Shown here: positions 1,538 through 49,902 of the stretch, piece after piece | Numbering within the stretch: position 1 is the stretch's first letter | Layout: the number at the start of each line of letters is the position of its first letter | DNA from: Mytilus trossulus | Taxonomy: Eukaryota | Assembly: GCF_036588685.1 (NCBI RefSeq) | Contig: NC_086381.1 | Span: forward strand, 41,106,001-41,170,000 | DNA: 64,000 bases | Direction of reading: 5' to 3' | Program-made: the position numbers and the translations under genes | Notes under the pieces: model-generated | What the model saw: the letters and a program-made list of their open reading frames with translations, nothing else | Told to the model about the DNA's origin: nothing | The model's database searches: none

Positions 1538-2073
1538 GTAAGGGACATTTTTACTTCATCTTTTTTTAATTAATTTGTTTTATTAAGATTAATTTTCGAG
1601 TTTATATATTTGCATTTGCTGAGATGTGTAGAAATTGTGTATTCGCAATTAAAATAATGAAATGTTTCAAGTTTTGAAAGACAATCAATACAGCTTATGA
1701 TTCAGTTCTGTGATAGCATTCATCTAGGGATATAATACTTGATTTTATCTTTTTTCATCATTTATTTATAAAATATAGTAAATTAATAATGATGAAGTAT
1801 TTTACCCCCATAATTAAAGAAAAGAAGTTTATATATCAATGTGTTGCTACATTGACAATCTTAACTGTGTCAATTCAGTAATACCTTCAAAAATTGTTGC
1901 TATGTTTTATCATTGAGAAAAATGGGACAGTATATATATCAGGTTTACATTAACAAAAACTTATAATTTCAGTAGTGTAAATGTTTTAAATTACATTAAA
2001 CAAATTCTTCTTTTTTTACAAGTAATCACTAATTCATAATAATAAATGAACCAATAATAATTTCTGACTTTAC

Positions 2074-2238
2074 AGAGGGGGGATTGGAGGGGTCCTGATC
2101 CTGAAATCCTAGGGTCCCAAATGTAAATAAATTTAAATCCCGAAAAAAATATTCCCAAATCCCAAAAGGATCAATCCTGAAATCCTGAGCTTAAAATCAC
2201 TGATCCCGGAGTCCCGATAACGGTCATATCCCCCCTCT
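2074..2238. mobile_element. MITE in the putative A1 5'UTR intron
   Basis: TIR agaggggggat / atcccccctct, TSD ttac, internal atccc/atcct repeats. Confidence 0.7.
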
Positions 2239-2326
2239 TTACACTGTATCAACATTCAGAATATAAAATACTTCAAAAGATCATAAGATCATTCTCCTAT
2301 TTGTTTTAAATTCCAGATCTGCAATC

Positions 2327-5300
2327 ATGTTTAAAGTCAAATATAACTACAAAGCCTCCATAGATACAGCCATTAACCTTTCTGTCGGAGATAAGATATC
2401 GAATGTTGAAGATCTTGGTAATGGTTGGTCAATGGGACATAATGTGTCAAGTGGAAAAACAGGAACATTTCCAACTAGTTATATTGCCAAAAACTTGACC
2501 TTCAAAGACAAGGTCAAAAGAATGTCAAGGGTAAGGAAGACCACTGACCAACTAGAGATAATGTATAAAGCCATATCTGCATACCAAGCTGACACAGATA
2601 CAGATATCAACCTTTGCGTTGGAGATACCATATCAAACGTTGAAGATGTCGGTAATGGTTGGTCAATGGGACATAATAAGTCAAGTGGGAAAACAGGAAC
2701 ATTTCCAACTAGTTATATTGCCAAAAACTTGACATTAAAAGACAAGGTCAAAAGAATGTCAATGGCGAAGAAGGCGACTGAAACACTAGAAATTAAGTTG
2801 AAAAACAAGAGTGAAGATACAGAGACTTTGGTTCCTCGGATCAAGGCCAAAATTCCTGATCATGTCTTACAAAGAAGACTTACTCGTGTTCCTGAACATT
2901 CTAATATTGTACAGAACAAAATTTCTAAAATTGTTCCAAAGCCAGTCAAATCCTTTGTCAACAGCAGCCGTGGAGATCACAGGATCGTGAAAGGCATCTT
3001 TGGGATATTTGGAGGTTTTATTGCCTGTGGAATCCTGTTTGTTCTCTTGAGATACAGTAATGAGTATTCTCTACAAATATCTTGCTACATAACAATAGGA
3101 TTTTCCCTCCCTATATGTGCAGCATTAGCCATTTCTACACACATGAGATGTATCTTTTTACTAATGGTTCCCAACCTGTTCACTGGAAAAGGACGAGCTG
3201 TATTCATGTCCATTATATTTGCCATGTTACTTGCTGGTCCCGTAGTAAACATTGTATACAATGCAGAGCAAGCATCGCAATCTATGGCCTGCACCCAGGA
3301 ACTGATCTATAACCAGACTTCCATCCTCAGAGGTCAACTAGAAGAACCAATTAGATTAATAGAAAGGAGAATTTATGAAGGCCTTGTCAAAATGAGGAAC
3401 ATTGCACATTCCATCAAAAATGCTATTGCACCAGTTACTAATGCAGTAAAAGTTTTTGCCGATGGTCTCAACACAGCTAAAAATGCACTAAAAAATGCAG
3501 CTAAGGTATTAGTTTTATTTACTTTGCATCATCTTTGCAGGTTAAAAAAAACCAACAGAATTTGTCTTTGCTTTAATTAACTCAATTTATTTTTTGTAAT
3601 TGATAAACACATTGCATTTTCATAGATATTTTAGTCTAGTGTTTTTTACATTCACAAAAGCAACAGAAAATTTGTATTTCTTTCAGCTCTTGAATTTGAG
3701 ATTCAATGTCACCTATAACACAAAACAAGCCAGAAAACTATAGTATTTCATGAAATAAATAATGGTTCCTTCAGTCTTAATTATATAAAACACAGGCAAA
3801 CTAAGTTTAAATAAATTGTTACCATATTTCTTCTAACTGTTTATATCATTTATCAGAGGATAATTCATTGGAAACATTTTCCTGTATTTAATTCCCCTCC
3901 CGTTTAACTGTATTTCTGTGCTTTCTATCTTTCCTTCCAATTAAATACATTTCCAAAGTTTCTAATTTTCCATCCCTGTTAATTGCATTTCTTAGCTTTC
4001 TATTTCTTCCTCTCCATTACAAGTATTTCAAAGCTTTTGATTTTTTTCCCTTCCTTAGTAGAATAGTTCCCTAGCTTCCTTTTTTTCTCTCCCCCACTCT
4101 ATTACCAGTAAAAGTTCTTTGTCTCCTCATTACCAGTAAAAGTTCTATTTCTGCTCTTTACCAGAAAAGTTCTTTTTCTGCTCTTTACCAGTAAAAGTTC
4201 TTTTTCTGCTCTTTACCAGTAAAAGTTCTATTTCTCCTCATTAACAGTAAAAGTTCTTTTTCTGCTCATTACCAGTGAAAGTTCTTTTTCTGCTCATTAC
4301 CAGTGCAAGTTCTTTTTCTGCTCTTTATCAGTAAAAGTTTTTTTATTGCTCTTTACCAGTAAAAGTTCTTTTTCTGCTCATTACCAGTGAAAGTTCTTTT
4401 TCTGCTCTTTACCAGTGAAAGTTCTTTTTCTGCTCTTTACCAGTGAAAGTTCTTTTTCTGCTCTTTACCAGTAAAAGTTCTTTTTCTGCTCTTTACCAGT
4501 AAAAGTTCTTTTTCTGCTCTTTACCAGTAAAAGTTCTTTTTCGGCTCATTACCAGTGAAAGTTCTTTTTCTGCTCTTTACCATTAAAAGTTCTTTTTCTG
4601 CTCTTTACCAGTAAAAGTTCTTTTTCTGCTCATTACCAGTGAAAGTTCTTTTTCTGCTCTTTACCAGTAAAAGTTCTTTTTCTGCTCTTTACCAGTAAAA
4701 GTTCTTTTTCTGCTCATTACCAGTGAAAGTTCTTTTTCTGCTCATTACCAGTGAAAGTTCTTTTTCTGCTCTTTACCAGTAAAAGTTCTTTTTCTGCTCT
4801 TTACCAGTGAAAGTTCTATTTCTGTTCTTTACCAGTAAAAGTTCTTTTTCTGCTCTTTACCAGTGAAAGTTCTTTTTCTGCTCTTTACCAGTGAAAGTTC
4901 TATTTCTGCTCTTTACCAGTAAAAGTTCTTTTTCTGTTCTTTACCAGTAAAAGTTCTTTTTCTGCTCATTACCAGTAAAAGTTCTATTTCTCCTCATTAC
5001 CAGTAAAAGTTCTTTTTCTGCTCTTTACCAGTGAAAGTTCTTTTTCTGCTCTTTACCAGTAAAAGTTCTTTTTCTGCTCTTTACCAGAAAAGTTCTTTTT
5101 CTGCTCATTACCAGTGAAAGTTCTATTTCTGTTCTTTACCAGTGAAAGTTCTTTTTCTGCTCTTTACCAGTGAAAGTTCTATTTCTGCTCTTTACCAGTG
5201 AAAGTTCTTTTTCTGCTCATTACCAGTGAAAGTTCTATTTCTGTTCTTTACCAGTAAAAGTTCTTTTTCTGCTCTTTACCAGTAAAAGTTCCTTTTCTGC

Positions 5301-7881
5301 TCATAACCAGTAAAAGTTCTTTTTCTGCTCTTTACCAGTAAAAGTTCTTTTTTCTCCTCATTTATCAAATTTGCAACCTATTTATTTTTTCCACTATCAC
5401 ATGTATTCAATGATTTCTTTTTTATTCTCCCATTTTCATATATTTCTACTTTGTTATTGCCTTCATGTTAAATGATTTTTTCTCTTTATAATGATTTTAA
5501 TACTTTGCATTTTCCCTAGGAATGTAGTAGAGGAGTGGAAAAAGCCCAGTTTGAATGTGAGAGGGGAATAAACTATGCTAAAAATAAGTGTGAAGAAGAC
5601 CTGAGAAGGGCAGACCCTTCAAATAAAGTCATCAAATTTGGTAAAGACGTAGCCAGAACTGGGGAAGACGTAGTGAGGAAAATAGAAAGAACTGGGGATA
5701 ACATTGTGAGGTCGCTAGGAAGGATTTTTGGGAAAAAAAGGAAAAGAAGGAGGGCTATGACAGAGGAAGAGAAAAATGCAATAGAGTTAGCTAAACAGCT
5801 GATGGAACAAGAAACACCATTACAAAGATATGGTGATTACCTTAACTCTAACAATGATGAAACAATAACCAATAACACCAGACTGCATAACCAACATGCA
5901 CTGAAAAGGTAGGTTAGAGAATAAACATACAGAGCATGCACTGAAATGGTAGGGATAGATTATACAAATAAATGTACCTTGATCTATAACGTTTTTCTAT
6001 TATAAATTGGTACTTCGATTTGTCTCATTGGAACTCATGCCACATCTTCATATATCTATAATTAACATGCACTGAAATGATAGGTTAGATAAAAAAAAAA
6101 ATCATCAACATGTGGTAAAATGGTAGGAGAATAAACATAAACCCCATGCATGCACTGAAATGGTAAGTTAGAGACAAACATAAGCAGCATGCTCTGAAAA
6201 AGTAAGTTCAAGAGAACAAACATAAACACCATGCACTTAGAGTTTCAATTCAGACAGAATAAACACATATAGGTATGAAGAAAAAAACACTAGTAAACGT
6301 CATGCAACATTTATTCTTTACCCTGAATGAATTTTTTTTCCAATACCCACCAACAAAAGTTGTTTTGATTTAGGGCATTTAAAGGACCAATTTATTAACT
6401 CTGCCACATTGTTTGTACAGAGTTAAGACATTTGCCTGTTGCCTTTATTATATAATTTTACCCCCTCTTTGTTTGGTTTAAGTGTTTTTTAAAGTATGCA
6501 TCAAAGAGCAAAACACAACAAAATGTAAAAAAATAAGAACTTTACTGTACAGTAAATTACAGTACTTCTTTGATTAATGATGGATATTTGTTTCCTTTGT
6601 AGGTCAAGGAGAGGTTTTTTGCATCATTTATGTATTGTTCTAGACATTGGGGCAGTTTGTAAAGTTGTCCAAGTAGGAACGTATGTTGCCTGTACACCTC
6701 TAAAATTCATAGCGCATATCATAGAAGTAGCTAATAATGAGATAAATTCCTTCTTAGATGGGATCACCTCCTTCTTCTCATTCGATTTTGAAGGAGGTTT
6801 TGATGCCGATGGGAAAATCAATTCCTCAAAAACAGCAGCACAAATCATTTCCCAAGTTAAAGCAGACATACAGTCTAGAACTAAATGGATTCTAACAGTA
6901 TCTGGTATAGTCAGTAACGTTCTTGTCATCACTCTATTGTTATTATTTCTTAAGTCAATCTTCTATCTTAAGAAGTTTCTCAGTAAGGATCGTTATGACA
7001 ATATCTACATTTCAAAGGCTTTTAAGACTTACGACCAGCAATGCAAGGCACAGGGAAAACCATCAGTTTTACCGCTGAAGAGAAAAGAATGCAGAAACTA
7101 CGCTGACACTCGGTCACCATGGCTATCATCAAAAGAAATAGATCATGCTAAAACTGGTATTACTAAAATTGGAATTCATATCTTGATAGCTACTGTTATA
7201 ATTTTCTTTGACTATGTTCTTTACTTTGTTTTAAAGCTTATTGATCGCTTTGGTAACCTGAATATAAATATCGGTGGCAACAGTTCCCTGAGTGTATCTG
7301 TAGAGGGCAGTGGATTTATTTCAGCATTTCTGAGAGCGTTCCTAGGCACTGTTGAATTAGATTCTGACTTTGGTGTTGAGTTTAACCTAACAACTTGTAT
7401 CCCAACTCCCAGTAAACCAGATGATGATAATATTTACAAGTTTAGTTTCCTTTACTTCTTTGCATTTGTGTTCCTTATAATGCAGGCTTATGGTTTACGT
7501 TTACGAAGGAAAATTGTCACATTCTTCTATCCAGAGCGAGATATTGAGAGGATAAAATATCTTCATGAGAAAATACGACACCAGAGAAAATCTCTGATGA
7601 ATTGGTTGACCCAGCATGTAATATCTAGAAACAAGCAATTCCATACGGAAAATCGTATATCTTTCCGCGGATGGATGGAATACCGATGTCCAATATTTGC
7701 TAATTGCTTTTGCCCTTGTCTTACATATAAGACATGCATTAGCTGTGAAAATAAGGATGGCGGTAAAATTCGCTTCCATCAATGTGATAAATGTCAATCT
7801 AATTACTGTGAGGAATGTTTTGGAGATATGAATTACATTTGTCTTGTTTGTAAAACTGAAACAAACATATCTAAACCTTAG
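2327..7881 (+). CDS. Gene A1: tandem-SH3 + DC-STAMP domain multi-pass membrane protein with C-terminal RING-like Cys8 domain (DCST1/DCST2/Sneaky-like); join(2327..3505,5520..5908,6603..7881), 948 aa
   Basis: Canonical GT-AG junctions keep frame (AAG|gtatta...ccctag|GAA, phase 0; AG|gtaggt...ttgtag|G, phase 2). Two SH3 motifs (GD.I.NV...GW..G....GKTGTFPTSYI). DC-STAMP-family motifs RC..LL.VP.LF.GKGR, GP..NI..N, S..C..EL, DRYDNIYI, LPL, LRRKI..FFYPERD.ERI. C-terminal CxxC...CxxC....CxxC.......CxxC. Confidence 0.9.
4100..5362 (+). repeat. 28-bp minisatellite (~45 copies) in A1 intron
   Basis: Unit ctttaccagt[a/g]aaagttctttttctgct. Confidence 0.95.
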
Positions 7882-8082
7882 TCTAATACATGTATATAGC
7901 AACATTCTGTCATGAATGCAGATCTTGAAGTGTAAATAATAAATATAATTTTTATAAACCTGTTATATTTTTTAACAAAAAATGTACTTTGAAAAATAAA
8001 AATTTGTAGAGAAATTGTTCTTTCTCTTTTAATAATAGCAAACCAATAGTACAATTAACTACCAGACAGTGCATTTAATCAA

Positions 8083-15536: not shown

Positions 15537-18500
15537 ATGACACATGTGGAAAAAAAAGCAGGAAAATCAAATCTTCGATTTAAAGAGACAAAGGCTGAAG
15601 ACCCACCCTCATACAACGATGCCCTTAGATTTCCTGACAAACTATTCAAAAGTGACCGCCATACATTTACCTGCCTAAAGGCTATATTTGGTATCTTCTG
15701 TGGATTTTTTACTGGTGGATTACTGTTTGTTCTGCTAATCTACAGTTTTGGTTTTGCCTTGGATATAGCTGGGTATATATCTATTGGAGTGACAGCCCTA
15801 GCGTGTCTAGGTCTAGCACTATCTGTCCATGTTCGCTGTATCGTGGTATTGATGATTCCTAGTCTATTTACTGGAAGAGGAAGGGTAGCCATTTTGGCAG
15901 TTATATTTGGACTCCTATTATCAGGACCAATCAAAAACATCTCTATAAATACTTCAGAAGTATCAAGAAGTATGGCCTGTAGTACTGAACTCTTTCAGAA
16001 TCAGTCGCACACTCTCAGACAGCAGTTAAATGTACCACTAGAGCAAATTACAAATGCTCTGGACAAACACGCCAAAGATATAAAGGAAATTGGAAAACAA
16101 ATAGATAGAGCAATAAAACCAATTTATGATGCTCTTGTTGCTGTTAAAAATGGTATCGAGAAAGTGAGCAATGCACTGGATACAGCTTCACAGGTAAAAA
16201 AGTAGTCAATGGTGCACTTGATTTAGGTTCACAGGTAAACTAGTAGTCAGTGGTGCACCTGATATAGGTTCACCGGTAAAATAGTAGTCAATGGTGCACT
16301 TGATATAGGTTCACAGGTAAAATAGTAGTCAGTGGTGCACTTGATAAAGGTTCACCGGTAAAATAGTAGTCAGTGGTGCACTTGATATAGGTTCACAGGT
16401 AAAATAGTAGTCAGTGGTGCACTTGATAAAGCTTCACAAGTAAACTAGTAGTCAGTGGTGCACTTGATATAGGTTCACAGGTAAAATTATAAGTCAGTGG
16501 TGCACTTGATATAGCTTCACAGGTGAACTAGTAGTCAGTGGTGCACTTGATATAGGTTCACGGGTAAAATAGTAGTCAGTGCTGCACTTGATATAGGTTC
16601 ACAGGTAAAATAGTAGTCAGTGCTGCACTGGTTATAGGTTCACAGGTAAAATAGTAGTCTGTGGTGCACTTGATTCAGCTTCACAGGTCAAATAATTAGT
16701 CAGTGGTGTACTTGATACAGCTTCACAGGTAAACTAGTAGTCAGTGGTGCACTAGATACAGCTTCACAGGTCAAATAATTACCATAGTCAGTGGTGTACT
16801 TGATACAGCTTCACAGGTGAAATAGCAATTCAATGCGCTGAATTTATTCAGATTCACAGGGAAAATAGTTGGATATATTCACTTGTACACAACACCTGAA
16901 TGTATATGAATGTATACAGAGGCTGATGAGTATGAGAAAATATTTATGTTCTTAAATGATGGAACATATGTTGAATGTAACTAAATATGTTAGCATGTTC
17001 AGCTGTGATTTATAAATGTTAATTCTGATGAGAAAAAGTATCATTTAAAGGTAATATATGCATACCAATAATTGTGGATAATTCAGAAATGATTGTTTAA
17101 TATCTACAAGATTGGGAATAATTATTTCCCATATTCACGATACCTGTTCTTATAATAATTGTAAATACCAATTTACCAATCTGGCATGAGTAATGGATAG
17201 AAATAAAATAATATTTTTGGGTCAGTAAAGATATCATATAATATTTTTTCCAATCGGAAAAATAATTATTACATAAGATTTTTTTTCCATTTTTTACATT
17301 TTAATGAGTGATATGTCAAAATGATATACCAGTCATAAGATGAAATTTCTACCATAATGTTTATTCAAAAGATAATTTATTATGTAATGACATATCCTAT
17401 TGGGCTTTGTTTTATGTGATAAAAATTCTGAGGCATTGGTCCTTTTATTATGCTGATGGAATAAATATCCCATAACAATAATTCCAATTGGAACTTTTGT
17501 AACATAATAAATCTTTGGAATAAATATAATGACGGAACTTATATTCTGTGACATACCTTTAGTGAGAGATTTCTTATGTTTATAATTTATATATTTACAG
17601 GAGTGTGACAGAATGATGAACAAAGTGTATGATGACTGTAGAAGAGAACTCAACAAGGCTTACAGTAAATGTAGGGAGACACTTAGAAAGGCTTTAAGGT
17701 ATAAATATCATCAATCGTCCATTATGTCTGACATCAGAATCATTTGATTATTAGTTTAAACAAACAAAAGATAAAAACCGTGATTCAGCTGCTGCTTGAA
17801 ATATTGGCAAATTAACCTAGGCAGAAAAGTTAACACTGAAAATTGGTAATTATTGTAATTGACCATTGTGTAGAGGAGATTTTTTTTTTTGGCGGGGGGA
17901 TGGGCAGGGCCTCAAAATAGTTGTCAAACTTATAAGTTCTGATGGTAATGCAACTTTAAAGAAAATCTTATCCTACCCATTGTTCTATCACAAGTGGTTT
18001 CTATCAAACTAAATGAAGCAAAAATTTAAAATTGCTTTAATTTCACAGTAATTAGTATACTCTTTTTCAGATATGTTCCAGGATTAGATCAGTCTCTAGT
18101 ATACTATTTTTCAGATATGTTCCAGGATAAGATCAGTATCTAGTATACTATTTTTCAGATATGTTCCAGGATTAGATCAGTATCTAGTATACTCTTTTTC
18201 AGATATGTTCCAGGATTAGATCAGTAACTAGTATATTCTTTTACAGATATGTTCCAGAATTAGATCAGTAACTAGTATACTCTTTTACAGATATGTTCCA
18301 GAATTAGATCAGTTTCTAGTATACTCTTCATTAGATATGTTCAAGGATTAGATCAGTAACTAGTATACTCTTTTACAGATATGTTCCCGAATTAGATCAG
18401 TAATTAGTATTATCTTTTACAGATATGTTCCAGGATTAGATCAGTAACTTGTATACTCTTTTACATATATGTTCCAGGATAAGATCAGTAACTATTATAC

Positions 18501-28606: not shown

Positions 28607-31600
28607 ATGTATAAAGTCATATTTACATACCCGGCCTCCACGGATACAGACATAAACCTTTGTGTGGGAGATACTGTATCAAACGTTGAAGATGTTGGTA
28701 ACGGCTGGTCAATGGGACATAATAGGTCCACTGGTAAAACTGGCACATTTCCAACTAATTTCATTGTTAGGAAATTGTCATTCAAAGACAAGGTCAAAAG
28801 AATGTCAATGGCAAAAAAGATGACTGACGAATTAGTCCTCATGTCCAAAAACAAGAGTGAAAGTACAGAAACTTTGGTTCCACGAAACAAGGCCAAAATT
28901 CCTGATGATATCTTACAAAAAAGACTTTCTCATGTTCCTGGACATTCAAATATCATAGGTGTCAGACTTCCTAAACTGGTTCCAAAGCCAGTCAAATCCT
29001 TTGGAAAGAACTTTGTCAACAGCAGCCGTGGAGATCACAGGATCGTAAAAGGTATCTTTGGGATATTTGGAGGTTTTATTGCCTGTGGAATCCTGTTTGT
29101 TCTCTTGAGATACAGTTATGAGTATTCTCTACAAATCTCTTGCTACATAACACTAGGATTTTCCCTCCCTATATGTGCAGCATTAGCCGTGTCTACACAC
29201 ATGAGATGTATCTTTTTACTAATGGTTCCCAACTTGTTCACTGGAAAGGGACGGACTGTATTCATGTCCATTATATTCGCCCTGTTACTTGCTGGTCCTG
29301 TAGTAAACATTGTCTACAATGCAGAGCAAGCATCGCAATCAATGGCCTGCACCCAGGAACTGATCTATAACCAGACTTCCATTCTTAGAGGTCAACTAGA
29401 AGAACCAATCAGATTAATAGAGAGGAGAATTTATGAAGGCCTTGTCAAACTGAGGAACATTGCAAATTCTATCAAAAATACTATAGCACCAGTTACTGAT
29501 GCAGTAAAGGCTTTTGCTAATGGTCTCAATGCAGCTAAAAATGCACTAGAAAATGCAGCAAAGGTAACTTTTATTTACTTTAGTGAACCTCATTGATTGG
29601 AGGATCTTTGCATTTTAAGAAAAAGAGAAATGGAATAGTATTTGTCTATTTTTTATTCACAAAAAGCTTGTTAGGAAGTAGAACTGATAAACTTTTAAAC
29701 ATATATATAAATATAAGCATTGTGTATAAGATTTATAGCATTTGTTAGCTGAACTTTGGTCAGAGAATGGAAATGAAAAATAAATCAGCATTTTTTCCAT
29801 TTGTACAGAAGCATGACTGAATTTATCTTGGCTATGATAGGGGAATACAAATCATAACTTTAAGATACCAAAATATCAGCAAATGTATATAAAAAAACAT
29901 ATCATTATCATTTTTAAGATAACATCTAAGTTCTATCATATGATGACATACACTTCTTTTTTTTCCCCCCTTTCAAAACTTTCACTTTACAATTTATTTC
30001 CTAGGAATGTAGTAATGGTATTAATACTGCCCAGTCTAAATGTGAGACAGGAATAAACAATGCTAAATCTGAGTGTGAAAAAGCTCTCAAATCTGTTGAC
30101 CCTACAAAGGATATTATCAACTTTGGGAAAGATGTAGCCAATACTGGGGAATCAATAGGAAATGGTTTGCGTAGATTGTTTGGGAAAAAAAGGAAAAGAA
30201 GGAGAGCTATTACAAAGGAAGAGAAAAATGCAATAGAGTTAGCTAAACAGTTGATTGGGCAAGAATCACCCTTACAAAGATATGATATCTATCTAAAATC
30301 TAAGAATACTGAGATGATAACCAATAACACCCGACTGCATAAACAGCATTCACTGAAAAGGTAGGTTAGTCTTGAGAATAAACATAAACCACAATCCCTT
30401 ATAAAGTAGATTAGATAATAAACATGAACAACATACACTGAAATGTTAAGTTAGAATTACACAAGATTGCAACTAAAATGATACAAACAATGAAAAAATG
30501 GCTTCAAAGTTTGCTAAACAAAATAAAAATGTCTCATAATATAAGTTGAATAACAGTATTTCAGTTTAATAATGATGAACATTTAATTTTCCTTGTAGGT
30601 CAAAAAGAGGTGTTTTGCATAAGATATGTGTGGTTCTTGACATTGATGATGTTTGTAAAGTTGTCCAAGTAGCCAATGTACTTGTCTGTAAGCCTATAAA
30701 ATTCATATCCACTGTCATAGAAGGTGCAAATACTGCAGTTAATTCTGTCCTTAATGAAATCATCTCCTTCTTTTATTTTGACTTTGATGGAGATATTAGT
30801 GCAAATGGGAATATCAATTCCTCAAAAACAGCAGCACAAATCATATCCCAAGTTAAAGATGACATACAGTCTAGAACTAAATGGATTCTAACAGTATCTG
30901 GTATAGTCAGTAACATTCTCGTCATCACTCTATTGTTATTATTTCTAAAGTCAATCTTCTATCTTAAGAAGTTTCTCAGTAAGGATCGCTATGACAATAT
31001 CTACATTTCAAAGGCTTTTAAGACTTACGACCAGCAATGCAAGGCACAGGGAAAACCATCAGTTTTACCGCTGAAGAGAAAAGAATGCAGAAACTACGCT
31101 GACACTCGGTCACCATGGCTATCATCGAAAGAAATAGATCATGCTAAAACTGGTATTACTAAAATTGGAATTCATCTCTTGATAGCAACTGTAATCATTT
31201 TCTTTGACTATGTTCTTTATTTTGTTCTGATGCTTATTGATCGCTATGGTAATCTGAATATAAAAATCGGTGGCAACAGTTACCTGAATGTATCAGTAGA
31301 GGGCAGTGGATTTATTTCAGCATTTTTAAGAGCTTTCCTAAGCACTATCGAATTGGATTCAGACTTTGGAGTAGAGTTTAACCTAACAACTTGTATCCCA
31401 ACTCCCAGTAAACCAGATGACAATAATATCTACAAGTTTAGTTTTCTTTATTTCTTTGCATTTGTGTTCCTTATAATGCAGGCTTATGGTTTACGTTTAC
31501 GAAGGAAAATTGTCACATTCTTCTATCCAGAGCGAGATATTGAGAGGATAAAATATCTTTATGAGAAAATACGACACCAGAGAAAATCTCTGTTGAATTG

Positions 31601-31880
31601 GTTGACCCAGCATGTCATATCTCGGAACAAGCAATTCCATATGGAAAATCGTATAACTTTCCGTGGATGGATGGAATACCGATGTCCCATATTTGCTAAA
31701 TATTTCTGCCCTTGTCTACCTAAATATAACAGATGTATCAGCTGTGAAAATAAGGAAGATGGGAGAATTCGCTTCCATCAATGTGATAAATGTCAATCTA
31801 ATTACTGTGAGGAATGTTTTGGAGATATGAAATACATTTGTCTCATTTGTAATGCTAAATCAAACATGTCAAAAAGGTGA
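28607..31880 (+). CDS. Gene A2: single-SH3 + DC-STAMP domain protein, paralog of A1; join(28607..29563,30005..30360,30599..31880), 864 aa
   Basis: Same exon structure and phases as A1 (AAG|gtaact...tcctag|GAA; AG|gtaggt...ttgtag|G). High similarity to A1 throughout; one SH3 unit only. Confidence 0.9.
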
Positions 31881-36149: not shown

Positions 36150-39100
36150 TGTTAACTACTGTGTTTTCTATTATTTTGTTTATATTATTTTCAGGTACAT
36201 GTTACTTGGTGGGTTTAGTTTATAGTTTAGTAAAGACATTAGAATAGACAATAGAATTATATTGAAGCCATAAATAGCCAATCAACAGTGGTAGCAGAGC
36301 TTATAAAGATGGCAACAGCACCTAGTTACAAGAACCCACCAGGTTTGACCAAAGATAAAAGTTATCAACAATGGAAAAATGAAGTTAAAATGTGGCAACT
36401 CGTGACCGATCTTGACAAGAAGAAGAGAGGTTTGGCTTTAGCTTTGTCGCTACAAGGAAAACCAAGGGAAGTAGCCCTAGAAGTAGATCCCACTGATTTA
36501 AATGTTGATGAAGGAGTAGATAAGCTGATAACTGAGTTGGACAAGCTTTTTGAGAAGGATAAAATAGATCAGGCTTATGCTGCATATACTGTATTTGATA
36601 AGTTCCACAGAATAGATGATTTAAGCATGTCTGATTATATCATTGAGTTTGAGCAGAGATACAATAAATGTAAGAAATATGAAATGGTACTCCCAGATGC
36701 AATTTTAGCTTTTAAACTTCTTGACAATGCTGGGTTAAGTCAAAGTAATCGTCAGCTGGCATTAACTGCATGTTCTGACCTTAAATTCGACACAATGAAA
36801 TCTGCTTTGAATAGGATATTTGCATCAAAATCTCAAAATTTTCCTGGAGAACAAGACTCTGTTGTAACTGTTAAAGAAGAATCAGCTTTTGTCAGTGATG
36901 GGTATTATCAGAGAGGTCGAAGTTCAAGAAGAAATTTTCCTCGTAATCGAGCTGATAGATCAACCAACTCTAGTAGACTTAAGACAAAAATGAATCCAGT
37001 CTTTAATGGAAATGTCTCAAGATGTAAAATATGTGATTCCAAATTTCATTGGGTCAAGGATTGTCCTCACAAGCAGCTCGATGTGAATTTAACAGAACAT
37101 GAGAGTGATGAGTTAAATGAAATTGTAAATATAACATTATTAACCTCTGCACAAGAATTTAAGCCTCTAACAGTGTTTGTCGCAGAAGCCTACAATGCTG
37201 CAGTTATTGATACTGCATGTTCCAAGACAGTGTGTGGTTCTAAATGGTTATATGAATTTGTAGAATCACTTGATCCAGGACTTGATCAACTTACTTGTAA
37301 TGAAAGTCATGTACCATTCAAATTTGGTGATGGACAAACAGTATATTCATATCAGAAAGTGAAAATTCCAGCACTAATTGGGTCAGTTAAGTGCTCAATT
37401 GAAACAGAAGTGGTGGATTGTGAAATACCGTTATTGTTAAGTAAAACCTCTCTGAAAAGAGCAAGCACTATCCTAGATCTCAGAAATGACAAGGTTACCA
37501 TGTTTGGACAGTTAGTGGATGTAAACCTAACTTCAAGTGGTCATTACTGTATCAACATTAAAGACAAGCAATGCACGAACAGAAATAAGAATGAGAGTGA
37601 GGAGGTTTTGATCATTGACACAAAATTACCTTTTAAGAAGAAAAAGGAGATTCTTTTAAAGTTGCATAAGCAGTTTGGACATGCATCATCAGATAAACTT
37701 TTATCCCTGTTACAAAGTGCTGGTTCTGTTGATTCTGAAACAAAGACCATTCTTAAAGATATCTGCACAAAGTGTTTAATTTGCCATAAGTTCAAGCATC
37801 CAAAAGCTAAACCAGTGGTTGCCTTTTCACATGCAAATGATTTCAATCAAATTGTGGCAATGGACCTTCATGAAATTGACCATAACTTTTATTATCTACA
37901 TGTTATTGACTTATTCAGCAGATTGAGTGCAGCTGCAATCATCAGAAGAAAGGACTCTAAAGTCATTGTAGATAAGTTCATGCAGATATGGGTGGGCGTT
38001 TATGGAGCACCTGAAGTTGGTGTTTACACAGATAATGGAGGTGAATTTAATTCACAGATATTTAGAGACATGGCAGAAAACTTAAACATGTCAGTTAAAA
38101 CAACAGCAGGATATAGTCCTTGGTCCAATGGTGTAGTAGAAAGACAAAACGCAACGCTTACAGAAACAATCAATAAAATGAGAGAAAGCTCTAACCTTTC
38201 ATGGGAGACTTCCGTCAGTTGGGCAGTCCATGCTAAGAACAGTTTGTTGAATGTCTATGGCTACAGTCCATATCAAATAGTTTTTGGAAGGAACCCAAAC
38301 ATGCCAACGTCTATAGTTAACAAGCCTCCTGCATTAGAAGGTACAACAATTAGTAATATTATGGGAAAGCATTTAGTTGGCTTACATGAAGCTAGAAAAG
38401 CATTTATTGCCGCAGAATCCTCTGAGAAAGTAAGAAGGGCACTACGTAAGCAAATCCGGCCTTCAGGAGAAAAATTCAAAAATGGTGACAAAGTTTTCTT
38501 CCTCCGAGACAATCAGTGGAAAGGACCAGGCTGGGTAATTGGTCAAGATAACGTAGTTGTTTTTGTAAGATATGGAGGTACATATGTCCGTGTACATGAA
38601 AGTAGATTAAAAAGAGACATTGATGTTGAAGGAAAACAAAAGATTATTCATAAGCATACAGCAAAGTCAACTCCTGTGCGTAAGCCTCAAGCTGCAACAT
38701 ATAACAACACTGAACCAGATCATGACTTAGTATACTATGAGAGTGACGATGAAGAGCCTCATCAAAATGATACTGAGAATGATGAAAATCAAGAAAATGT
38801 TGAAGAATCTGCAGACGAAAGTGCTGATCAAGATGATAGTCATGCTGGTAGCTTGAATGGTAGTTTGAATGGTGAAGATGGTCATGAATCTGAAGGGAGA
38901 GACAGTTTTGATTTGGAAAATCCGGCAGATAATGATATACATGAGGAAAGTATGGAACATAATCCTGAGTCCCAGGAAAATGATTGTATGAAATTAAAGA
39001 AGGATCAGATAGTGAATTTTAAAATCCCTGGTGAAAATGACACAAGAGAAGCAATAATTTTAGGCAGGGCAGGAAAAGCTACAACTGTTAAAAAGAGCTG

Positions 39101-40976
39101 GTACAATATAGAATACAATCAGCCAGAAAATATGAGAGGTGATCAGATATCAATTGATCTAAGAACAGTCAATGATTTGAAAGTTGTTAACCAGTCAGAT
39201 GAAATGAATGAAGATGTATTTTTAAGCGATATTGATTTTACTGAGGCTAGAGAGGCAGAACTGGATAACTGGAGAAAGCACAATGTTTTTGAAGAAGTTG
39301 AAGACAATGGTCAAAACTGTATTTCAACAAGATGGGTTTACACTATGAAAGAATTAGAGAACGAATTTCATAGAAAAGCTAGATTGGTAGCAAAAGGTTT
39401 TGAAGAAGACAGTCTAGATGAAATACCAAAGAATTCACCAACATGTGAAAAGCAGTCTCTACGACTAATTTTATCAATTATTGCTAGTAAAAGATGGTCA
39501 ATTAATTCTGTGGACATTAAAACTGCTTTTCTTCAAGGAGAGAAAATGCAAAGAGAAGTCTACTTGAGACCTCCTAAAGAAGTTAAAGCAACTGGTAAAG
39601 TCTGGCGCCTTAACAAATGTGTATATGGTCTTGTTGATGCATCCTTAAAGTGGTATGAAAAAGTTAAAGCAACATTGCTAGATTGTGGAGGAACAGTGTC
39701 CAAAATTGATTCAGCAGTTTTTTATTGGTATAATGAAAAAGGTTTGACTGGTGTCCTAGCAGTTCATGTAGATGACTTTCTTTGGGCAGGATCCAGTACC
39801 TTTGAGAAAAGTGTTGTGTCCAGAATTAGGGATATGTTCAAGGTAGGGAAAGAATCCTGTGAGTCTTTCAAATATTTAGGTCTTGACCTCAGCCAAGAAA
39901 ATGAAACTATTGTTCTCAGCCAGCAAGACTATGTCAGAATGTTGAAGACTGTTTCAATAGATAAAGACAGAGTTAAAACATCTCCTCTTTCATCATCAGA
40001 ACAGACACTATTGAGGTCAAAAATAGGACAATTATTATGGTTAGCAAGACAAACACGTCCAGACATTGCGTTTGATGTTGCTGCTATTTCATCAAAAATT
40101 AAGTCTAGCACTATTGAAGATCTAAAGAAAGTCAATAAAATAATTAGGAAGGTGCAAAACGATCCCGTTTCACTGCAATTCCAGAATCTTGGACATGATG
40201 TGAAATTTATGTTGTTCAGTGATGCATCATTTGGAAATCTTCCAGATGGTGGAAGTCAGGGTGGTTATGTTGTGTTTTTGATGGGCGATGATGGTAAAGT
40301 GAAACCCTATCACTTGGCAGTCTAAGAAATTAAGAAGGGTTGTACGTAGTACTTTGGCAAGTGAAGCCTTGGCCTTAGCTGATGGTGTGGACTGTGTTAT
40401 ATCTTTAGCAGCTCTGTTTAAGGAATTAATGCACAATGAGAACGATTTGATGCATACTCCAGTAGATTGTTTCGTTGACAACAAAGACCTTTATCATGCA
40501 ATATACTCTGATAAACCTGTTGGAGAAAAGAGATTGAGGGTGGAGATCAATGCAATAAAGCAATTACTTCAAGGTGGAGAGCTTAAAGAAGTTAAATGGA
40601 TTCAGACAAATGAACAAATCGCCAATGTTCTTACAAAGCATGGTGCTTCTGGACAAGACATCTTACGTTGTTTTGAAAAAGGACTTTTGAATTCAAGCCT
40701 TTTGTAATTAGTGCAACTGACAATAAAAAAAAGGAGAAAAGATCAGATAAATACTTGATACTATGACATTTTAATTGCCTTCATTTTTATTTTTATTTGG
40801 ACATTAACATTTCTAGTGAAAAGAGAAAAGGATTAGATTGTTAACTACTGTGTTTTCTATTATTTTGTTTATATTATTTTCAGGTACATGTTACTTGGTG
40901 GGTTTAGTTTATAGTTTAGTAAAGACATTAGAATAGACAATAGAATTATATTGAAGCCATAAATAGCCAATCAACA
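36150..40976 (+). mobile_element. Full-length Ty1/copia LTR retrotransposon, GalEa-clade-like
   Basis: Identical 138-bp LTRs (36150..36287, 40839..40976; TGTT...AACA). 5-bp TSD CGGAC. PBS TGGTAGCAGAGC (complementary to the initiator Met tRNA 3' end). PPT gaaaagagaaaagga before the 3' LTR. Domain order Gag-PR-IN-RT-RH. Confidence 0.95.
36309..40707 (+). CDS. Gag-Pol polyprotein of the copia element, with one +1 frameshift at ~40302-40304 in RNase H
   Basis: Zn knuckle CKICDSKFHWVKDC; protease AVIDTAC; integrase HKQFGH..C..C, MDL, TDNGGEF, VER; RT KARLVAKGF, VDIKTAFLQG, HVDD; RNase H SDAS. Removing one A from gtgaaaccct restores NPITWQSKKLRRVVRSTLASEALAL and joins ORF 40354..40707. Confidence 0.9.
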
Positions 40977-47430: not shown

Positions 47431-48076
47431 GTAAGCTGATTATTTTATTATTTTATTTTTTATAAAATATCATTTTATTTGATTTTGTCTTACCAAAAAG
47501 AGATAAGGGTATAACATAAAGCAATTTACCAGATAGGGACAGTTATAGAAATCTTAAATCATATATACAAGTGAGTAATATGGCAAGCTGTAAAGATTAA
47601 ATGGTTATTGCTTGCATGCTTAACATTTACTGGAATATGAAAGCTTGATAAAGTATAGATATTTCGTGGATGTATAGATTCCCACACTGCAAAAGGGTAT
47701 TACTATATTTCTATATTTCTGCCAAGAACAGATATTTAAGTAGTGAGAAAAAATATTTTTCTCTCAACGATCAAGAAATGTGAAAATAGCACAAAAATTG
47801 GAAAAAAGTCATTCTTGTACTGACATAACTCATTTTAGAAAGGTATGCAAAAGATATATATCCAAAGTAGAAAGAAATTGAAAAAAAGTAAAGGCTCTTC
47901 TTCTAAATACTTTTCATCTAATAATATATCTAATAAAAATTAAAAATATTATGGTTGAGTACTTATCATTTGAAGAAACCAGAAAATCTAAAAACATAAC
48001 GCTTTTAAAAAGTTGGTTCAACTTGCAAAGAATAAATATCTTGGTTTTTTTTGCACAGACAGAAAGGAAAGTAAGA

Positions 48077-49902
48077 ATGACACATGCAGACAAAACACCA
48101 GGGAGTTCAAAACTTGAATCCATCAAGAGAAAGTCTGATGACCCACCCTCATACAATGATGCCATGAGATTTCCTGACAATTACCACAATACATTTCCTG
48201 ACAAACTATTTAAAAGTGAACGCCATACATTTACCTGCCTGAAGGCTATATTTGGTATCTTTTCTGGAATATTGACTGGTGGAATACTGTTTGTTCTGCT
48301 AATCTACAGTTTTGGTTTTGCCTTGGATATAGCTGGATATATATCTATTGGAGTGACAGCCTTAGCATGTCTAGGTCTAGCACTATCTGTCCATGTCCGC
48401 TGTATCGTGGTACTGATGATTCCTAGTCTATTTACTGGTAGAGGAAGGGTAGCCATCTTGGCAGTTATATTGGGACTCCTGTTATCAAGACCAATCAAAA
48501 ACATCTCTATAAATACTTCAGAAGTATCCAGAAGTATGGCCTGTAGTACCGAACTCTTTCAGAATCAGTCACACTCTCTCAGACAACAGCTCCAGGTACC
48601 AATAGAGCAGATTAAAGTAGCCTTGGGTAAACAGGCAGAGGATATAAAGATGTTAGGAACAGCAATAGATAAAGCCATAGAACCAATTTATAATGCTCTT
48701 GTTGCTGTTAAAAAAGGTGTCAAGTTAGTGAGTGGTGCATTGGATACTGCTTCACAGGTAAAATATTAAGCCAGTGTTGCAGTGTATTCAGATTCACAAG
48801 TAAAATTTAAGAACCTTAGTGAGCAGGCTCATATACCCCACATCCCCACATTGTCATTGGAGAAATTAAATAAGTGTAAGGAAAAAAATTGTATAAGAAA
48901 AAATATTGAATAATAATTTCCTGTCAATATCCACATCTACATGCATAGTATGTCCTTATTATTTACAAAATTTCATGAAATTCTGTTGTGTGGTTTCAGA
49001 GTAGTTGAGATGACAAACTGATGCAGAAGTACATTGAAGCAAATAAGTTCAAAGGGGTGTAACTCCTAGAAAAAAAAATGAATCAAAATTTGTTGTCGAA
49101 ATGCACATCTACGTAGTATGTCCTTTATATACAAAGTTTCATGAAATTCTGTTGTGTGGTTTGAGAGGAGTTGAGGTGACAAACTGTGGAAGTAGTACCT
49201 TAAAGCAAATAAGTTCAAACAGGTGTAACTCCTAGAAAAAAAATTGAATCATAATTTCCTGTTGGTATGCACATCTACATAGTATGTCCTTATTATCTGA
49301 AAAGGTTTCGTGAAATTCTGTTGTGTGGTTTGAGAGGAGTTGCGATGACAATCTGTTGCAGTAGTTCATTAAAGTAAATAAGTTCAAAGGGGCGTTACTC
49401 CTAGAAAAAAAATTGAATCATAATTTCCCGTCGATATGCACAACTACATAGTATGTCCTTGTTATCTGAAAAGGTCTCGTGAAAATCTGTTGTGTGGTTT
49501 GAGAGGAGTTGCGATGACAAACTGTTGCAGTAGTACACTAAAGTAAATAAGTTCAAAGGGGCATAACTCCTAGAAAAAAAATTGAATCGCAATTTCCCTT
49601 CAACATGCACAACTACATAGTATGTCCTTATTAAATGAAAAGGTTTCGTGAAATTCTGTTGTGTGGTTTGAGAGGAGTTGCGATGACAAACTGTTGCAGT
49701 AGTACGTTAAAGTAAATAAGTTCAAAGGGAAAAAAATTGAATTGCAATTTCCCGTCGATATGCACAACTACATAGTATGTCAATATTATCTGAAAAGGTT
49801 TCGTGAAATTCTGTTGAGTGGTTTGAGAGGAGTTGCGATGACAAGAAACAGGACTGACGGACGGACGGACTGACGGACGGACGGACGGACGGACTGACGG
49901 AT

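What the first reader, a model, noticed from the sequence alone, without database searches (positions are those of the whole stretch)
2327..2795. SH3 domains fused to a DC-STAMP protein, with copy-number variation between paralogs
Seen: A1 starts with two 78-aa (234-nt) tandem units, each containing an SH3 fold (second unit at 2561); A2 has one; B genes have none. The SH3 is in the same exon as the first TM helices, so the fusion is not a gene-model artefact. The pattern GDxIxNV...GW resembles nebulin/LASP-type SH3s, but the acidic RT-loop (DEL) is altered to TAI/TDI. Known: the characterised DCST1/2, DC-STAMP, Sneaky and SPE-42 proteins lack SH3, as far as I recall. Inference: a built-in cytoskeletal or signalling adaptor on a fusion-regulating membrane protein.
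Basis: partly seen in the sequence, partly recalled or inferred. Interest (0 to 1): 0.8.

Follow-up and report, generated by a model that had tools for sequence, protein, structure and literature searches.

The report
SH3 domains on mussel DC-STAMP-like proteins
A mussel gene for a DC-STAMP/DCST-type membrane protein (a family needed for cell and gamete fusion in other animals) really does begin with two SH3 adaptor domains, but this fusion is an old, shared feature of molluscs and a brachiopod and is already present in public gene models.

Summary
A1 exon 1 (2327-3505) is one open frame. It holds two Pfam SH3 domains (E 5e-19) in a 234-nt tandem repeat (83% identical), followed by the first membrane helices. 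A2 has one SH3; B1 and B2 have none, even against a family-specific HMM. Spliced transcript contigs cover the exon. AlphaFold gives two confident SH3 barrels, matched by Foldseek to solved SH3 structures.

The architecture is not unique. The genome is most likely Mytilus trossulus, and A2 equals RefSeq XP_063397922.1. SH3 plus DC_STAMP proteins occur in Mytilus, Mizuhopecten, Pinctada, Mya, Haliotis, Patella and Lingula, and in an unnamed clade with long linkers.

Trees indicate that the SH3 is ancestral and that the B genes lost it. The two-SH3 state is a Mytilus-specific in-exon duplication. It is shared with a third copy, A0, upstream, and both units are under purifying selection.

I read the SH3 as a cytosolic adaptor for proline-rich partners; that function is inferred, not shown. 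I found no paper describing the fusion. It is a new variant of a known kind, of moderate interest.

The parts
2317..3505 (+). A1 exon 1. Coding starts at the ATG at 2327 (393 codons): two SH3 units, a linker and the first hydrophobic helices. The exon starts near 2317, after an AG acceptor (the upstream exon is spliced on here).
   Evidence: ORF and sequence. Joint 3505|5520 (GT..AG), and contig X1 record 1 lying on 2315-2485 only from its letter 90 onward.
2327..2560 (+). Repeat unit 1 (78 codons). The SH3-1 barrel is residues 1-55; Ala stands at the RT-loop acid position.
   Evidence: (pLDDT 85-91).
2561..2794 (+). Repeat unit 2 (78 codons). The SH3-2 barrel is residues 79-133; the RT-loop Asp is kept.
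   Evidence: (pLDDT 89-92).
2795..2980 (+). Linker predicted to be disordered, between SH3-2 and the first membrane helix.
   Evidence: pLDDT under 50 for residues 136-177 and 186-214.
2981..3505 (+). First membrane helices (model helices 219-244, 249-269, 271-284) and the start of the long helix that leads into the ectodomain.
   Evidence: Hydropathy was run on the A2 protein P0156.
5520..5908 (+). A1 exon 2 (ectodomain part).
   Evidence: GT..AG joints 3505|5520 and 5908|6603 in contigs of runs X1, X2, X4 and X14.
6603..7881 (+). A1 exon 3: DC_STAMP domain (about 6994-7566), last membrane helices, Cys-rich C-terminal tail and stop codon.
   Evidence: Pfam PF07782 E 4.2e-51 at residues 140-330 of ORF 6577..7881; joints.
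28607..29563 (+). A2 exon 1: a single SH3 (28607-28777) plus linker and first membrane helices. It is identical to residues 1-319 of RefSeq XP_063397922.1.
30005..31880 (+). A2 exons 2 and 3. Their approximate limits come from the protein match: 30005-30361 and 30597-31880.
   Evidence: tblastn of P0156, 100% identity.
15537..16202 (+). B1 first coding exon: no SH3. It has a short N-terminal tail with a PPSY motif, then the homologous membrane helices.
47951..48766 (+). B2 first coding exon: no SH3; PPSY motif present.

Best explanation
A0, A1 and A2 are tandem paralogs in a mussel genome, most likely Mytilus trossulus. They encode DC-STAMP/DCST-type multi-pass membrane proteins whose cytosolic N-terminus carries genuine SH3 domain(s). 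The SH3 was fused to this protein family before molluscs and brachiopods diverged. It has been kept in many lineages and lost repeatedly, including in the neighbouring Mytilus B genes.

In the ancestor of A0 and A1, a 234-nt in-frame tandem duplication that began 3 nt before the start codon doubled the SH3 together with its 21-residue tail. Both copies have since been kept under purifying selection. Unit 1 lost the RT-loop acidic residue, which suggests a changed ligand preference.

Inferred mechanism (not shown): a disordered linker of 60-85 residues tethers the SH3(s) to the first membrane helix on the cytosolic face. There they dock proline-rich cytosolic partners such as actin regulators, endocytic proteins or signalling proteins. 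This couples the membrane protein, and its cytosolic Cys-rich C-terminal finger, to the cortex. Two SH3s would raise valency or widen specificity.
For: SH3 identity. Pfam SH3_1 scores E 5.1e-19 with 2 stretches. phmmer against PDB sequences matched 88 distinct SH3-containing sequences at E<=0.001. AlphaFold2 of the 393-aa exon gives two beta barrels at pLDDT 85-92. Foldseek against the PDB gives 374 matches at E<=0.001 among the 500 counted; the top hits are tandem SH3s (2mox, E 2.4e-08), and single SH3s reach TMt 0.8-0.92.

Fusion is real and transcribed. It is one ORF. Contigs of 4 of 4 runs laid lie on the three exons and not on the introns, with GT..AG joints. One contig (2473-2659) bridges the boundary between the units, and another (2707-3391) runs from SH3-2 into the membrane helices.

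Conservation. Of the best 150 of 1056 phmmer hits, 48 carry one SH3 plus the homologous membrane region, and 12 of those are full length with the DC_STAMP part. Pfam confirms DC_STAMP in 12 of 12, and an SH3 family over its curated cut-off in 10 of 12. The sources name Mytilus, Mizuhopecten, Pinctada, Mya, Haliotis, Patella and Lingula. A shared signature (GNGW..G.N...G.FP) runs through all 48 SH3s.

Loss in B. In the careful tree, B1, B2 and P0023 are sister to scallop P0004, which has an SH3 (100/99). Starred branches force at least 6 changes of state. P0054 holds a decayed SH3 (E 2e-08 to the family HMM).

Selection. dN/dS is 0.30 (unit 1) and 0.25 (unit 2) between A0 and A1, and 0.15-0.43 over the other comparisons.

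Binding residues. Trp is kept in 21 of 22 rows, Pro in 22 of 22, the second ALYDY aromatic in 22 of 22, and the RT acid in 18 of 22.

Topology. P0156 has six hydrophobic segments. Cys and N-glycosylation sequons sit in the 297-aa loop, and Lys/Arg are enriched on the other side. The N- and C-termini of the relative OC-STAMP were shown experimentally to be intracellular (PMC4456411, abstract and passages). The C-terminus of DCST proteins is described as intracellular (PMC8989947, passages).
Against: No ligand, localisation or tissue is known. The run labels were coded, so I cannot say whether expression is in testis, haemocytes or elsewhere. The runs were only guessed to be RNA, except X14; the spliced joints are what argue for RNA.

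The selection estimates rest on very few differences: 5 synonymous against 5-6 non-synonymous changes per unit between A0 and A1.

The hydrophobic stretch 175-207 could be one helix or two. If the number of helices before the ectodomain were even, the SH3 would face outward. The N-in topology is therefore inferred, partly from a distant relative.

The Mytilus A proteins have no PxxP motif of their own, and I identified no partner.

Some 'losses' in other species may be truncated gene models. The full-length AlphaFold model is only moderate (mean pLDDT 67.8, pTM 0.47).
Confidence: 0.7

Rival explanations
1. The SH3 serves assembly or self-regulation of the DC-STAMP-like complex itself. It would bind a proline motif in the cytosolic tail of the partner paralog (A with B) or in its own linker (autoinhibition), rather than recruiting cytoskeletal or signalling proteins.
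For: A and B genes alternate as pairs: A0-B0, A1-B1, A2-B2. In Mytilus only A has an SH3, whereas in scallop the B-lineage protein P0004 has it and the A-lineage P0014 does not. Vertebrate Dcst1 and Dcst2 depend on each other for stability (PMC8989947, passage). Both B tails carry PPSY. In the unnamed long-linker clade, many linkers hold RxxPxxP or PxxPx[RK] motifs next to the SH3, for example in P0069, P0071, P0072, P0090 and P0095.
Against: PPxY is a WW-domain motif, not a classical SH3 ligand (recalled knowledge). The Mytilus A linkers have no PxxP at all. Proline motifs are common in disordered tails by composition alone, and I ran no control for that. No interaction data exist.
Confidence: 0.17
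2. The SH3 units are evolutionary baggage without present function. The second copy in A0 and A1 would be a neutral duplication on its way to decay, as happened in the B genes.
For: SH3 has been lost repeatedly in this family: at least 6 changes are forced by well-supported branches, and a decayed SH3 survives in P0054. Unit 1 lacks the RT-loop acid, and A1 unit 2 has Ser at the first ALYDY tyrosine position.
Against: Both units keep open frames and dN/dS well below 1 (0.25-0.30 since the A0/A1 split; 0.32-0.38 between units). The core binding residues Trp, Pro and the aromatic positions are kept in all five Mytilus units. The domain is conserved from brachiopod to bivalve. AlphaFold confidence is high for both barrels.
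Confidence: 0.06
3. The fusion is an artefact: an assembly or reading error that joins an SH3 gene to a DC-STAMP gene.
For: None was found. Tandem Repeats Finder did not list the 234-nt repeat.
Against: It is a single uninterrupted ORF. The same structure occurs at three loci of the genome. Independent transcript contigs cross the boundary between the units and the SH3-to-helix stretch. The architecture is the same in other species' models.
Confidence: 0.01

Closest known systems
DCST1/DCST2, Sneaky, SPE-42/SPE-49 (sperm DC-STAMP-domain proteins required for gamete fusion)
   Same: They share the DC_STAMP Pfam domain (E 4e-51), a multi-pass layout with a large Cys-rich ectodomain, and a cytosolic Cys-rich C-terminal finger. 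[quoted passage not shown] The genes occur as paired paralogs.
   Different: This protein has an N-terminal SH3 (one or two). The echinoderm relatives lacked it by Pfam (P0059, P0104, P0064, P0115, P0086), and an insect Sneaky (P0094) lacked it by my phmmer mapping. I did not scan vertebrate DCST1/2 or nematode SPE-42 directly. The genes here have few introns and are tandemly amplified. A function in fertilisation is not shown for these genes.
DC-STAMP / OC-STAMP (osteoclast and giant-cell fusion)
   Same: Same domain family. The N- and C-termini of OC-STAMP are experimentally intracellular and its large loop is glycosylated (PMC4456411), which fits the topology inferred here. That paper's introduction notes that osteoclast fusion also needs a separate adapter protein, Tks5; that Tks5 holds several SH3 domains is my recollection.
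   Different: In vertebrates the SH3 adaptor is a separate protein, whereas here an SH3 is built into the membrane protein. Sequence similarity is remote: no PDB sequence hit at all for exon 3.
Tandem-SH3 adaptors (SORBS1/CAP, STAC, p47phox, Grb2) and the LASP1/nebulette SH3
   Same: These are the best structural matches: 2mox tandem SH3 (E 2.4e-08), STAC1-3, p47phox, LASP1 3i35 (TMt 0.92, 33% identity) and nebulette 4f14 (TMt 0.90). LASP1 is the second-best sequence hit (E 1.5e-06).
   Different: Those are soluble adaptors. In the A1 model the two SH3s are separated by a low-confidence 23-residue spacer and show no packed super-SH3 arrangement (rmsd 9.6-19 A over the tandem matches). Sequence scores around 30 bits do not assign a subfamily.
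Public models of the same architecture, for example XP_063397922.1 (M. trossulus), UniRef A0A8B6G2T4 'SH3 domain-containing protein' (M. galloprovincialis), XP_021361157.1 (Mizuhopecten) and XP_013397132.1 (Lingula)
   Same: They have the same SH3-linker-helices-DC_STAMP order. A2 is 100% identical to the first of them.
   Different: All 48 relatives with SH3 plus membrane region among the 150 listed hits have a single SH3. Two units were seen only in A0, A1 and the 153-aa fragment P0003, which is 91% identical to A1.

Membership tests
SH3 domain (Pfam PF00018 / clan SH3) | Match to the family HMM above the curated cut-off | tested here: met
   SH3_1 scores 68 bits against a cut-off of 22.9, with 2 stretches. 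SH3_9 scores 65.7 against 30.
SH3 domain (Pfam PF00018 / clan SH3) | Five-stranded beta-barrel fold | tested here: met
   The AlphaFold2 model has strands at 2-4, 23-31, 34-39, 44-49, 53-55 and again at 80-133, at pLDDT 85-92. Foldseek matches solved SH3s at TMt 0.8-0.92 and rmsd 0.8-2.3 A. This is a prediction, not a solved structure.
SH3 domain (Pfam PF00018 / clan SH3) | Conserved peptide-binding residues: ALYDY aromatics, RT-loop acid, Trp, and Pro/Tyr of the 3-10 helix. The list of positions is recalled from the SH3 literature and placed using the LASP1 alignment. | tested here: met
   Trp, Pro and the second aromatic are present in all five Mytilus units. The RT acid is present in unit 2 and in A2 but is Ala in unit 1 of A0 and A1. 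The first ALYDY Tyr is Ser in A1 unit 2.
SH3 domain (Pfam PF00018 / clan SH3) | Binding of PxxP-type ligands | not testable with these tools
   This needs peptide arrays or pull-downs.
DC-STAMP / DCST family (Pfam PF07782) | DC_STAMP domain above the cut-off | tested here: met
   174 bits against a cut-off of 25, over positions 1-191 of the 191-position profile. The own-genome scan finds six such exons in the C9 cluster.
DC-STAMP / DCST family (Pfam PF07782) | Multi-pass membrane protein with intracellular termini | tested here: inconclusive
   P0156 (= A2) has six hydrophobic segments, and the distribution of Cys, sequons and Lys/Arg fits N-in/C-in. The segment 175-207 is ambiguous, and no experimental topology exists.
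DC-STAMP / DCST family (Pfam PF07782) | C-terminal Cys-rich non-canonical RING finger (described in PMC8989947, passages) | tested here: inconclusive
   There are 11 Cys in the C-terminal 126 residues of P0156. C817 and C820 are at least 90% conserved in the 40-row alignment. Pfam reported no RING family. I did not check the 'six invariant cysteines' one by one.
DC-STAMP / DCST family (Pfam PF07782) | Role in cell-cell or gamete fusion | not testable with these tools
   No tissue labels were available for the runs. One paper lists a 'DCST2' contig up-regulated 3.23-fold in M. galloprovincialis haemocytes (PMC7023338, passages); which paralog it is remains unknown.
   LASP1 and nebulette give the best TMt and rmsd among the single domains listed, and they rank 2nd and 7th by sequence. 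Yeast Bzz1 ranks first, and Src-family entries fill most of the list. All scores are about 26-33 bits.

The most novel reading that the evidence does not exclude
DC-STAMP-like proteins of lophotrochozoans work as A/B heteromers that need just one built-in SH3 adaptor per pair. After the A/B duplication, the SH3 was kept in only one partner: A in Mytilus, and the B-lineage protein in scallop. In broadcast-spawning molluscs this SH3 would anchor the fusion-related membrane complex to the actin machinery of the sperm acrosomal process. In Mytilus that process is a preformed actin bundle ending on the acrosomal membrane (PMC2114433, abstract seen in the listing). The doubled SH3 of A0 and A1 would then be a recent tuning of that coupling.
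Probability: 0.12. Interest if true: 0.75.

Novelty: new variant of a known kind. Interest (0 to 1): 0.45.

Why it matters
DCST1/2, Sneaky and SPE-42/49 are the only sperm fertilisation factors reported as shared between vertebrates and invertebrates (PMC8830517, passages). What they do inside the cell is unknown. A natural version that carries a standard, easily assayed protein-interaction module on its cytosolic tail gives a direct handle: find the SH3 ligands and one finds what the family is wired to. In vertebrate osteoclast fusion an adapter protein (Tks5) is a separate, required component (PMC4456411, introduction passage). A built-in SH3 here would suggest that the link between STAMP-type proteins and SH3 adaptors is old and general.

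The locus also gives a clean small case of domain gain, in-exon duplication and repeated loss within one tandem gene family. The weight of the finding is limited. The architecture is already in public gene models, and nothing functional is known for any member.

Tried and rejected
Tandem Repeats Finder did not list the 234-nt repeat, probably because two copies fall below its reporting; the repeat finder did list it.

I looked for a hidden or decayed SH3 upstream of B1 and B2 with a family HMM at --max. Nothing scored below E 1.2, so a 'missed exon' in B is rejected within this window.

I tried to name the taxon of the long-linker SH3 clade (about 20 clusters of 550-1017 aa ORFs) and failed.
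- The cluster look-up gave no names.
- The word-index protein search with P0069 returned 5 proteins, all unnamed.

A PDB sequence search with exon 3 found no solved relative of the DC_STAMP part (0 hits).

The literature searches went as follows.
- 'DC-STAMP' / 'SH3 domain' / 'DCST1': 77 papers held at least 2 terms and 15 were listed. The only two listed with 'SH3 domain' are cancer gene-list papers.
- 'DC-STAMP' / 'Mytilus' / 'sperm'.
- A badly designed six-term search returned only general mollusc papers.
- 'DC-STAMP' + 'mollus': 10 papers, 9 listed, none on architecture.
- The review PMC8830517 has 0 occurrences of 'SH3'.

So 'not described' means not found in these searches of open-access text. 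Subscription journals, InterPro/CDART architecture tables and supplementary files were not searchable here. The supplements of PMC7023338 might show which DCST2-like contig was up-regulated.

I considered an extracellular SH3 and think it unlikely, for the topology reasons given, but it is not excluded. I did not rank expression from depth, because all the runs are contigs. I did not run a Foldseek search with the full-length model.

Exons were searched apart, and the full-length fold used the public protein P0156 (= A2).
Full report
WHAT IS IN THE SEQUENCE

The window carries four genes of the DC-STAMP family on the + strand, in the order A1, B1, A2, B2. A copia-like retrotransposon ORF lies between A2 and B2.

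A1 begins with an ATG at 2327, inside a 417-aa open frame. The frame leaves the exon at 3505 (AAG|GT). The first 156 codons are two 78-codon units. The repeat finder gives 2 copies of 234 nt at 2324-2557 and 2558-2791, 83% identical; in codon register the units are 2327-2560 and 2561-2794. Tandem Repeats Finder did not report this period.

Pfam scores the exon with SH3_1 at E 5.1e-19 (two stretches), SH3_9 at 3.3e-18 and SH3_2 at 2.8e-07. The third exon scores DC_STAMP at 4.2e-51.

A2 (28607-29563) has one unit. A family-specific SH3 HMM that I built from 48 relatives, run unfiltered on all six frames, finds three domains in the window and nothing else below E 1.2. B1 and B2 therefore have none.

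THE FUSION IS NOT AN ARTEFACT

The SH3 units, the linker and the first hydrophobic helices share one ORF.

I laid the contigs of four public runs on 2000-7990. They cover 2315-3505, 5518-5908 and 6601-7944 and leave the introns essentially empty. They show GT..AG joints at 3505|5520 and 5908|6603. These contigs are therefore spliced RNA, although three of the four runs were only guessed to be RNA.

One contig (2473-2659) crosses the boundary between the units. Another (2707-3391) runs from SH3-2 into the helices. A third lies on 2315-2485 only from its 90th letter, so an upstream exon is spliced to an acceptor about ten bases before the ATG.

By my arithmetic, A1 has exons of 393 codons, 129 codons plus 2 nt, and 1 nt plus 425 codons, about 948 residues in all.

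WHOSE GENOME, AND WHAT IS ALREADY PUBLIC

The window lies on a contig of 82,295,107 bases. [quoted passage not shown] That 864-residue protein is 100% identical to the three A2 exons in the window. So the genome is most likely M. trossulus, and A2 with its SH3 is already a RefSeq model.

MORE COPIES IN THE GENOME

A scan of the genome itself finds six DC_STAMP exons in this part of the chromosome, plus multi-exon family members on two other contigs.

The A2 first exon matches three A-type and three B-type first exons. The third A gene, A0, lies about 118 kb upstream and also has two units. A remnant at C9:41014074-41014181 keeps the promoter-proximal sequence and 36 codons, then breaks off at a TGA.

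ORDER OF EVENTS

Unit 1 of A0 and A1 are 95% identical to each other, and so are the two units 2 (96%). Unit 1 against unit 2 is 80-83%. The single A2 unit is 77-81% identical to all of them.

Nei-Gojobori estimates give:
- dS about 0.11 for A0 against A1;
- dS 0.39-0.49 between the two units;
- dS 0.60-0.79 for A2 against either unit.

The single-SH3 state is therefore the older one. The in-exon duplication happened in the common ancestor of A0 and A1, and the gene duplication that made A0 and A1 came later. All 48 relatives in other species that have an SH3 plus the membrane region have just one SH3. Two units were seen only in A0, A1 and the fragment P0003, which is 91% identical to A1.

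dN/dS is 0.30 and 0.25 for the two units since the A0/A1 split, and 0.15-0.43 elsewhere. This points to constraint on both copies, but the counts are small (5 synonymous and 5-6 non-synonymous differences).

One odd point: the membrane part of the same exon has dS of only 0.18 between A1 and A2, against 0.70 for the SH3 part. This suggests gene conversion of the membrane part.

HOW WIDESPREAD IS THE ARCHITECTURE

I ran phmmer with the A2 first exon against 1.84 billion cluster representatives. It gave 1056 proteins at E<=0.001, of which the best 150 are listed.

My mapping of three query pieces onto those 150 shows:
- 48 have one SH3 followed by the homologous membrane region;
- 12 of those are full length and include the DC_STAMP part.

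Pfam confirms DC_STAMP in 12 of 12. An SH3 family reaches its curated cut-off in 10 of 12; P0088 is weak, and P0016 has none at E<=0.001, although phmmer and the family HMM both see its SH3.

The sources name Mytilus galloprovincialis, M. edulis and M. trossulus, Mizuhopecten yessoensis, Pinctada imbricata, Mya arenaria, Haliotis asinina, H. cracherodii and H. rufescens, Patella vulgata and the brachiopod Lingula anatina. UniRef calls several of them 'SH3 domain-containing protein'.

A further well-supported clade holds 21 unnamed ORFs from unannotated assemblies. Nineteen of them have an SH3, a linker of about 350 residues and then the membrane region. I could not name its taxon. Its SH3s share the family signature GNGW..G.N...G.FP, which argues for a single origin of the fusion.

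Outside these groups, five relatives lack SH3 by Pfam: three are named by their sources as echinoderms (Diadema, Antedon, Acanthaster) and two are unnamed proteins that group with them. A wasp Sneaky lacks it by my mapping.

GAIN OR LOSS IN THE B GENES

I built a careful maximum-likelihood tree of the exon-3 part. It has 40 rows; I left out four long-branch rows (P0103, P0129, P0139, P0142) and the double protein P0079.

The tree puts B1 and B2 with an unnamed relative, and then with scallop P0004, which has an SH3 (support 100/99). The A genes group with two Pinctada SH3 proteins and an SH3-less scallop protein (98/95). SH3-bearing gastropod proteins branch below both groups, within a mollusc clade of 23 rows (94/96). 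Well-supported branches force at least 6 changes of the SH3 state; the quick tree with all 44 rows agreed.

Because the SH3s share one signature, repeated loss is the simpler reading. P0054, which was scored as SH3-less, still holds a decayed SH3 (E 2e-08). Some losses may instead be truncated gene models. The position of the Lingula proteins relative to the echinoderm ones is unresolved (42/61).

STRUCTURE AND TOPOLOGY

I ran AlphaFold2 on the A1 first exon with a 22-row alignment. It gives two barrels at pLDDT 85-92 (residues 1-55 and 79-133), low confidence for the spacer (64-76) and the linker (136-214), and then helices.

Foldseek matches solved tandem SH3s (SORBS1 2mox at E 2.4e-08, then STAC and p47phox) and single SH3s. 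LASP1 (TMt 0.92, rmsd 0.8 A) and nebulette (TMt 0.90) are the tightest. By sequence, yeast Bzz1 and LASP1 lead at about 32 bits.

The full-length model of P0156 is moderate (mean pLDDT 67.8, pTM 0.47). It again shows a confident SH3, a disordered stretch at residues 57-136 and a helical membrane core.

Hydropathy gives six hydrophobic segments. The 297-residue loop holds 7 Cys and 3 sequons. Lys and Arg cluster on the opposite face, and the C-terminal tail has 11 Cys. This fits N-in/C-in. It also agrees with the experimentally intracellular termini of OC-STAMP (PMC4456411, abstract and passages) and with the intracellular C-terminal finger described for DCST proteins (PMC8989947, passages). 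The segment 175-207 is ambiguous, so the cytosolic location of the SH3 is inferred, not shown.

BINDING SITE

I took the positions from the LASP1 alignment printed; which positions contact ligands is recalled knowledge. Across 22 aligned family members the counts are:
- Trp in 21 of 22;
- Pro in 22 of 22;
- the second ALYDY aromatic in 22 of 22;
- the RT-loop acid in 18 of 22.

A1 unit 2 has Ser at the first ALYDY tyrosine, where A0 has Tyr.

WHAT IT MOST LIKELY DOES

Shown:
- a real, transcribed, conserved SH3 lies at the N-terminus of a DC-STAMP-type membrane protein;
- it is doubled in two Mytilus paralogs.

Inferred:
- the SH3 faces the cytosol on a flexible tether and recruits proline-rich partners;
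- the doubling raises valency or adds a second specificity.

Neither the biological setting (gamete fusion, as for DCST1/2, or somatic cell fusion) nor the partners are known. One paper lists a 'DCST2' contig up-regulated 3.23-fold in M. galloprovincialis haemocytes treated with myticin C (PMC7023338, passages), so a somatic role cannot be dismissed.

A rival reading is that the SH3 binds the partner paralog or its own linker. This is suggested by the A/B pairing, by the apparently reciprocal retention of the SH3 in mussel and scallop, and by PxxP-rich linkers in the long-linker clade. The Mytilus A linkers, however, have no PxxP, and the PPSY of the B tails is a WW-type motif rather than an SH3-type one (recalled).

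NOVELTY AND SCORE

The domain combination exists in public models of at least seven genera from two phyla, so it is not a discovery of this window. I found no paper that describes it. The searches were made, and the review has no 'SH3'. These covered open-access full text only; supplements and InterPro were not available.

What I found in no paper is the reading as a whole: the fusion is ancestral in this clade, it has been lost repeatedly including in the adjacent B genes, and Mytilus has a recent in-exon doubling under constraint. I class it as a new variant of a known kind, with interest 0.45.

Earlier notes of this scan on the same window describe the A/B cassette and other features. They did not change my reading.

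Noticed in passing
L005:4074-4181 (G000:C9:41014074-41014181): This is a remnant of an A-type first exon. The upstream region and the first 36 codons are 78% identical to A2 at protein level. The frame then hits TGA and similarity ends, probably a truncated extra copy between the A0-B0 and A1-B1 pairs.
   Followed up: partly
L004:1948-6171 (G000:C9:40989948-40994171): A third A gene (A0) has two SH3 units and the same three-exon layout. A B-type first exon lies at about C9:40998042 and a B-type DC_STAMP exon at about C9:41006298 (taken as B0). The cluster is therefore three A-B pairs, not two.
   Followed up: partly
window 2327-3505 versus 28607-29563: Divergence within one exon is mosaic. The SH3 part of A1 against A2 has dS of about 0.70, while the membrane part has dS of about 0.18. 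This suggests gene conversion of the membrane part between paralogs.
   Followed up: partly
window 15537-15690 and 47951-48250: Both B proteins carry a PPSY (PPxY-type) motif in their short N-terminal tails (B1 residue 23, B2 residue 65). PPxY is a WW-domain/NEDD4-type docking motif by recalled knowledge.
   Followed up: no
window 2000-2240 and 6000-6199: Transcript-contig depth is very high here, with many loose ends and short irregular skips. This behaves like a dispersed short repeat (MITE-like) sitting just upstream of A1 exon 1 and inside intron 2.
   Followed up: no
window 5654-5688: One contig of run X4 skips 33 bases (11 codons) inside A1 exon 2, with non-canonical ends AG..AA. It is more likely an allelic or paralog length difference than splicing. 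Another odd joint, 3506 to 5727 (TA..TT), appears in X1.
   Followed up: no
window 36288-40707: A long ORF of 1345 aa, plus a 117-aa continuation, has gag/integrase/reverse-transcriptase-like wording of a copia-type retrotransposon. It lies between A2 and B2. I only listed it.
   Followed up: no
P0030, P0049, P0056, P0069, P0071, P0072, P0090 and others (unnamed ENA/Logan contigs): These form a separate clade of first-exon ORFs with an SH3, a linker of about 350 residues that is often rich in RxxPxxP or PxxPx[RK] motifs, and then the DC-STAMP-type membrane region. The precomputed Pfam label is PF26039. The taxon is unknown.
   Followed up: partly
P0018, P0020, P0026, P0032, P0055: These proteins of 1120-1376 residues have 8-10 tandem SH3 domains and are among the best matches to the A2 SH3. 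Their origin and relation to the fused SH3 were not examined.
   Followed up: no
P0054 residues 15-54: A mollusc-clade DC-STAMP protein that phmmer scored as SH3-less keeps a decayed SH3 (family HMM E 2e-08; FP replaced by FL). It looks like an intermediate on the way to loss.
   Followed up: partly
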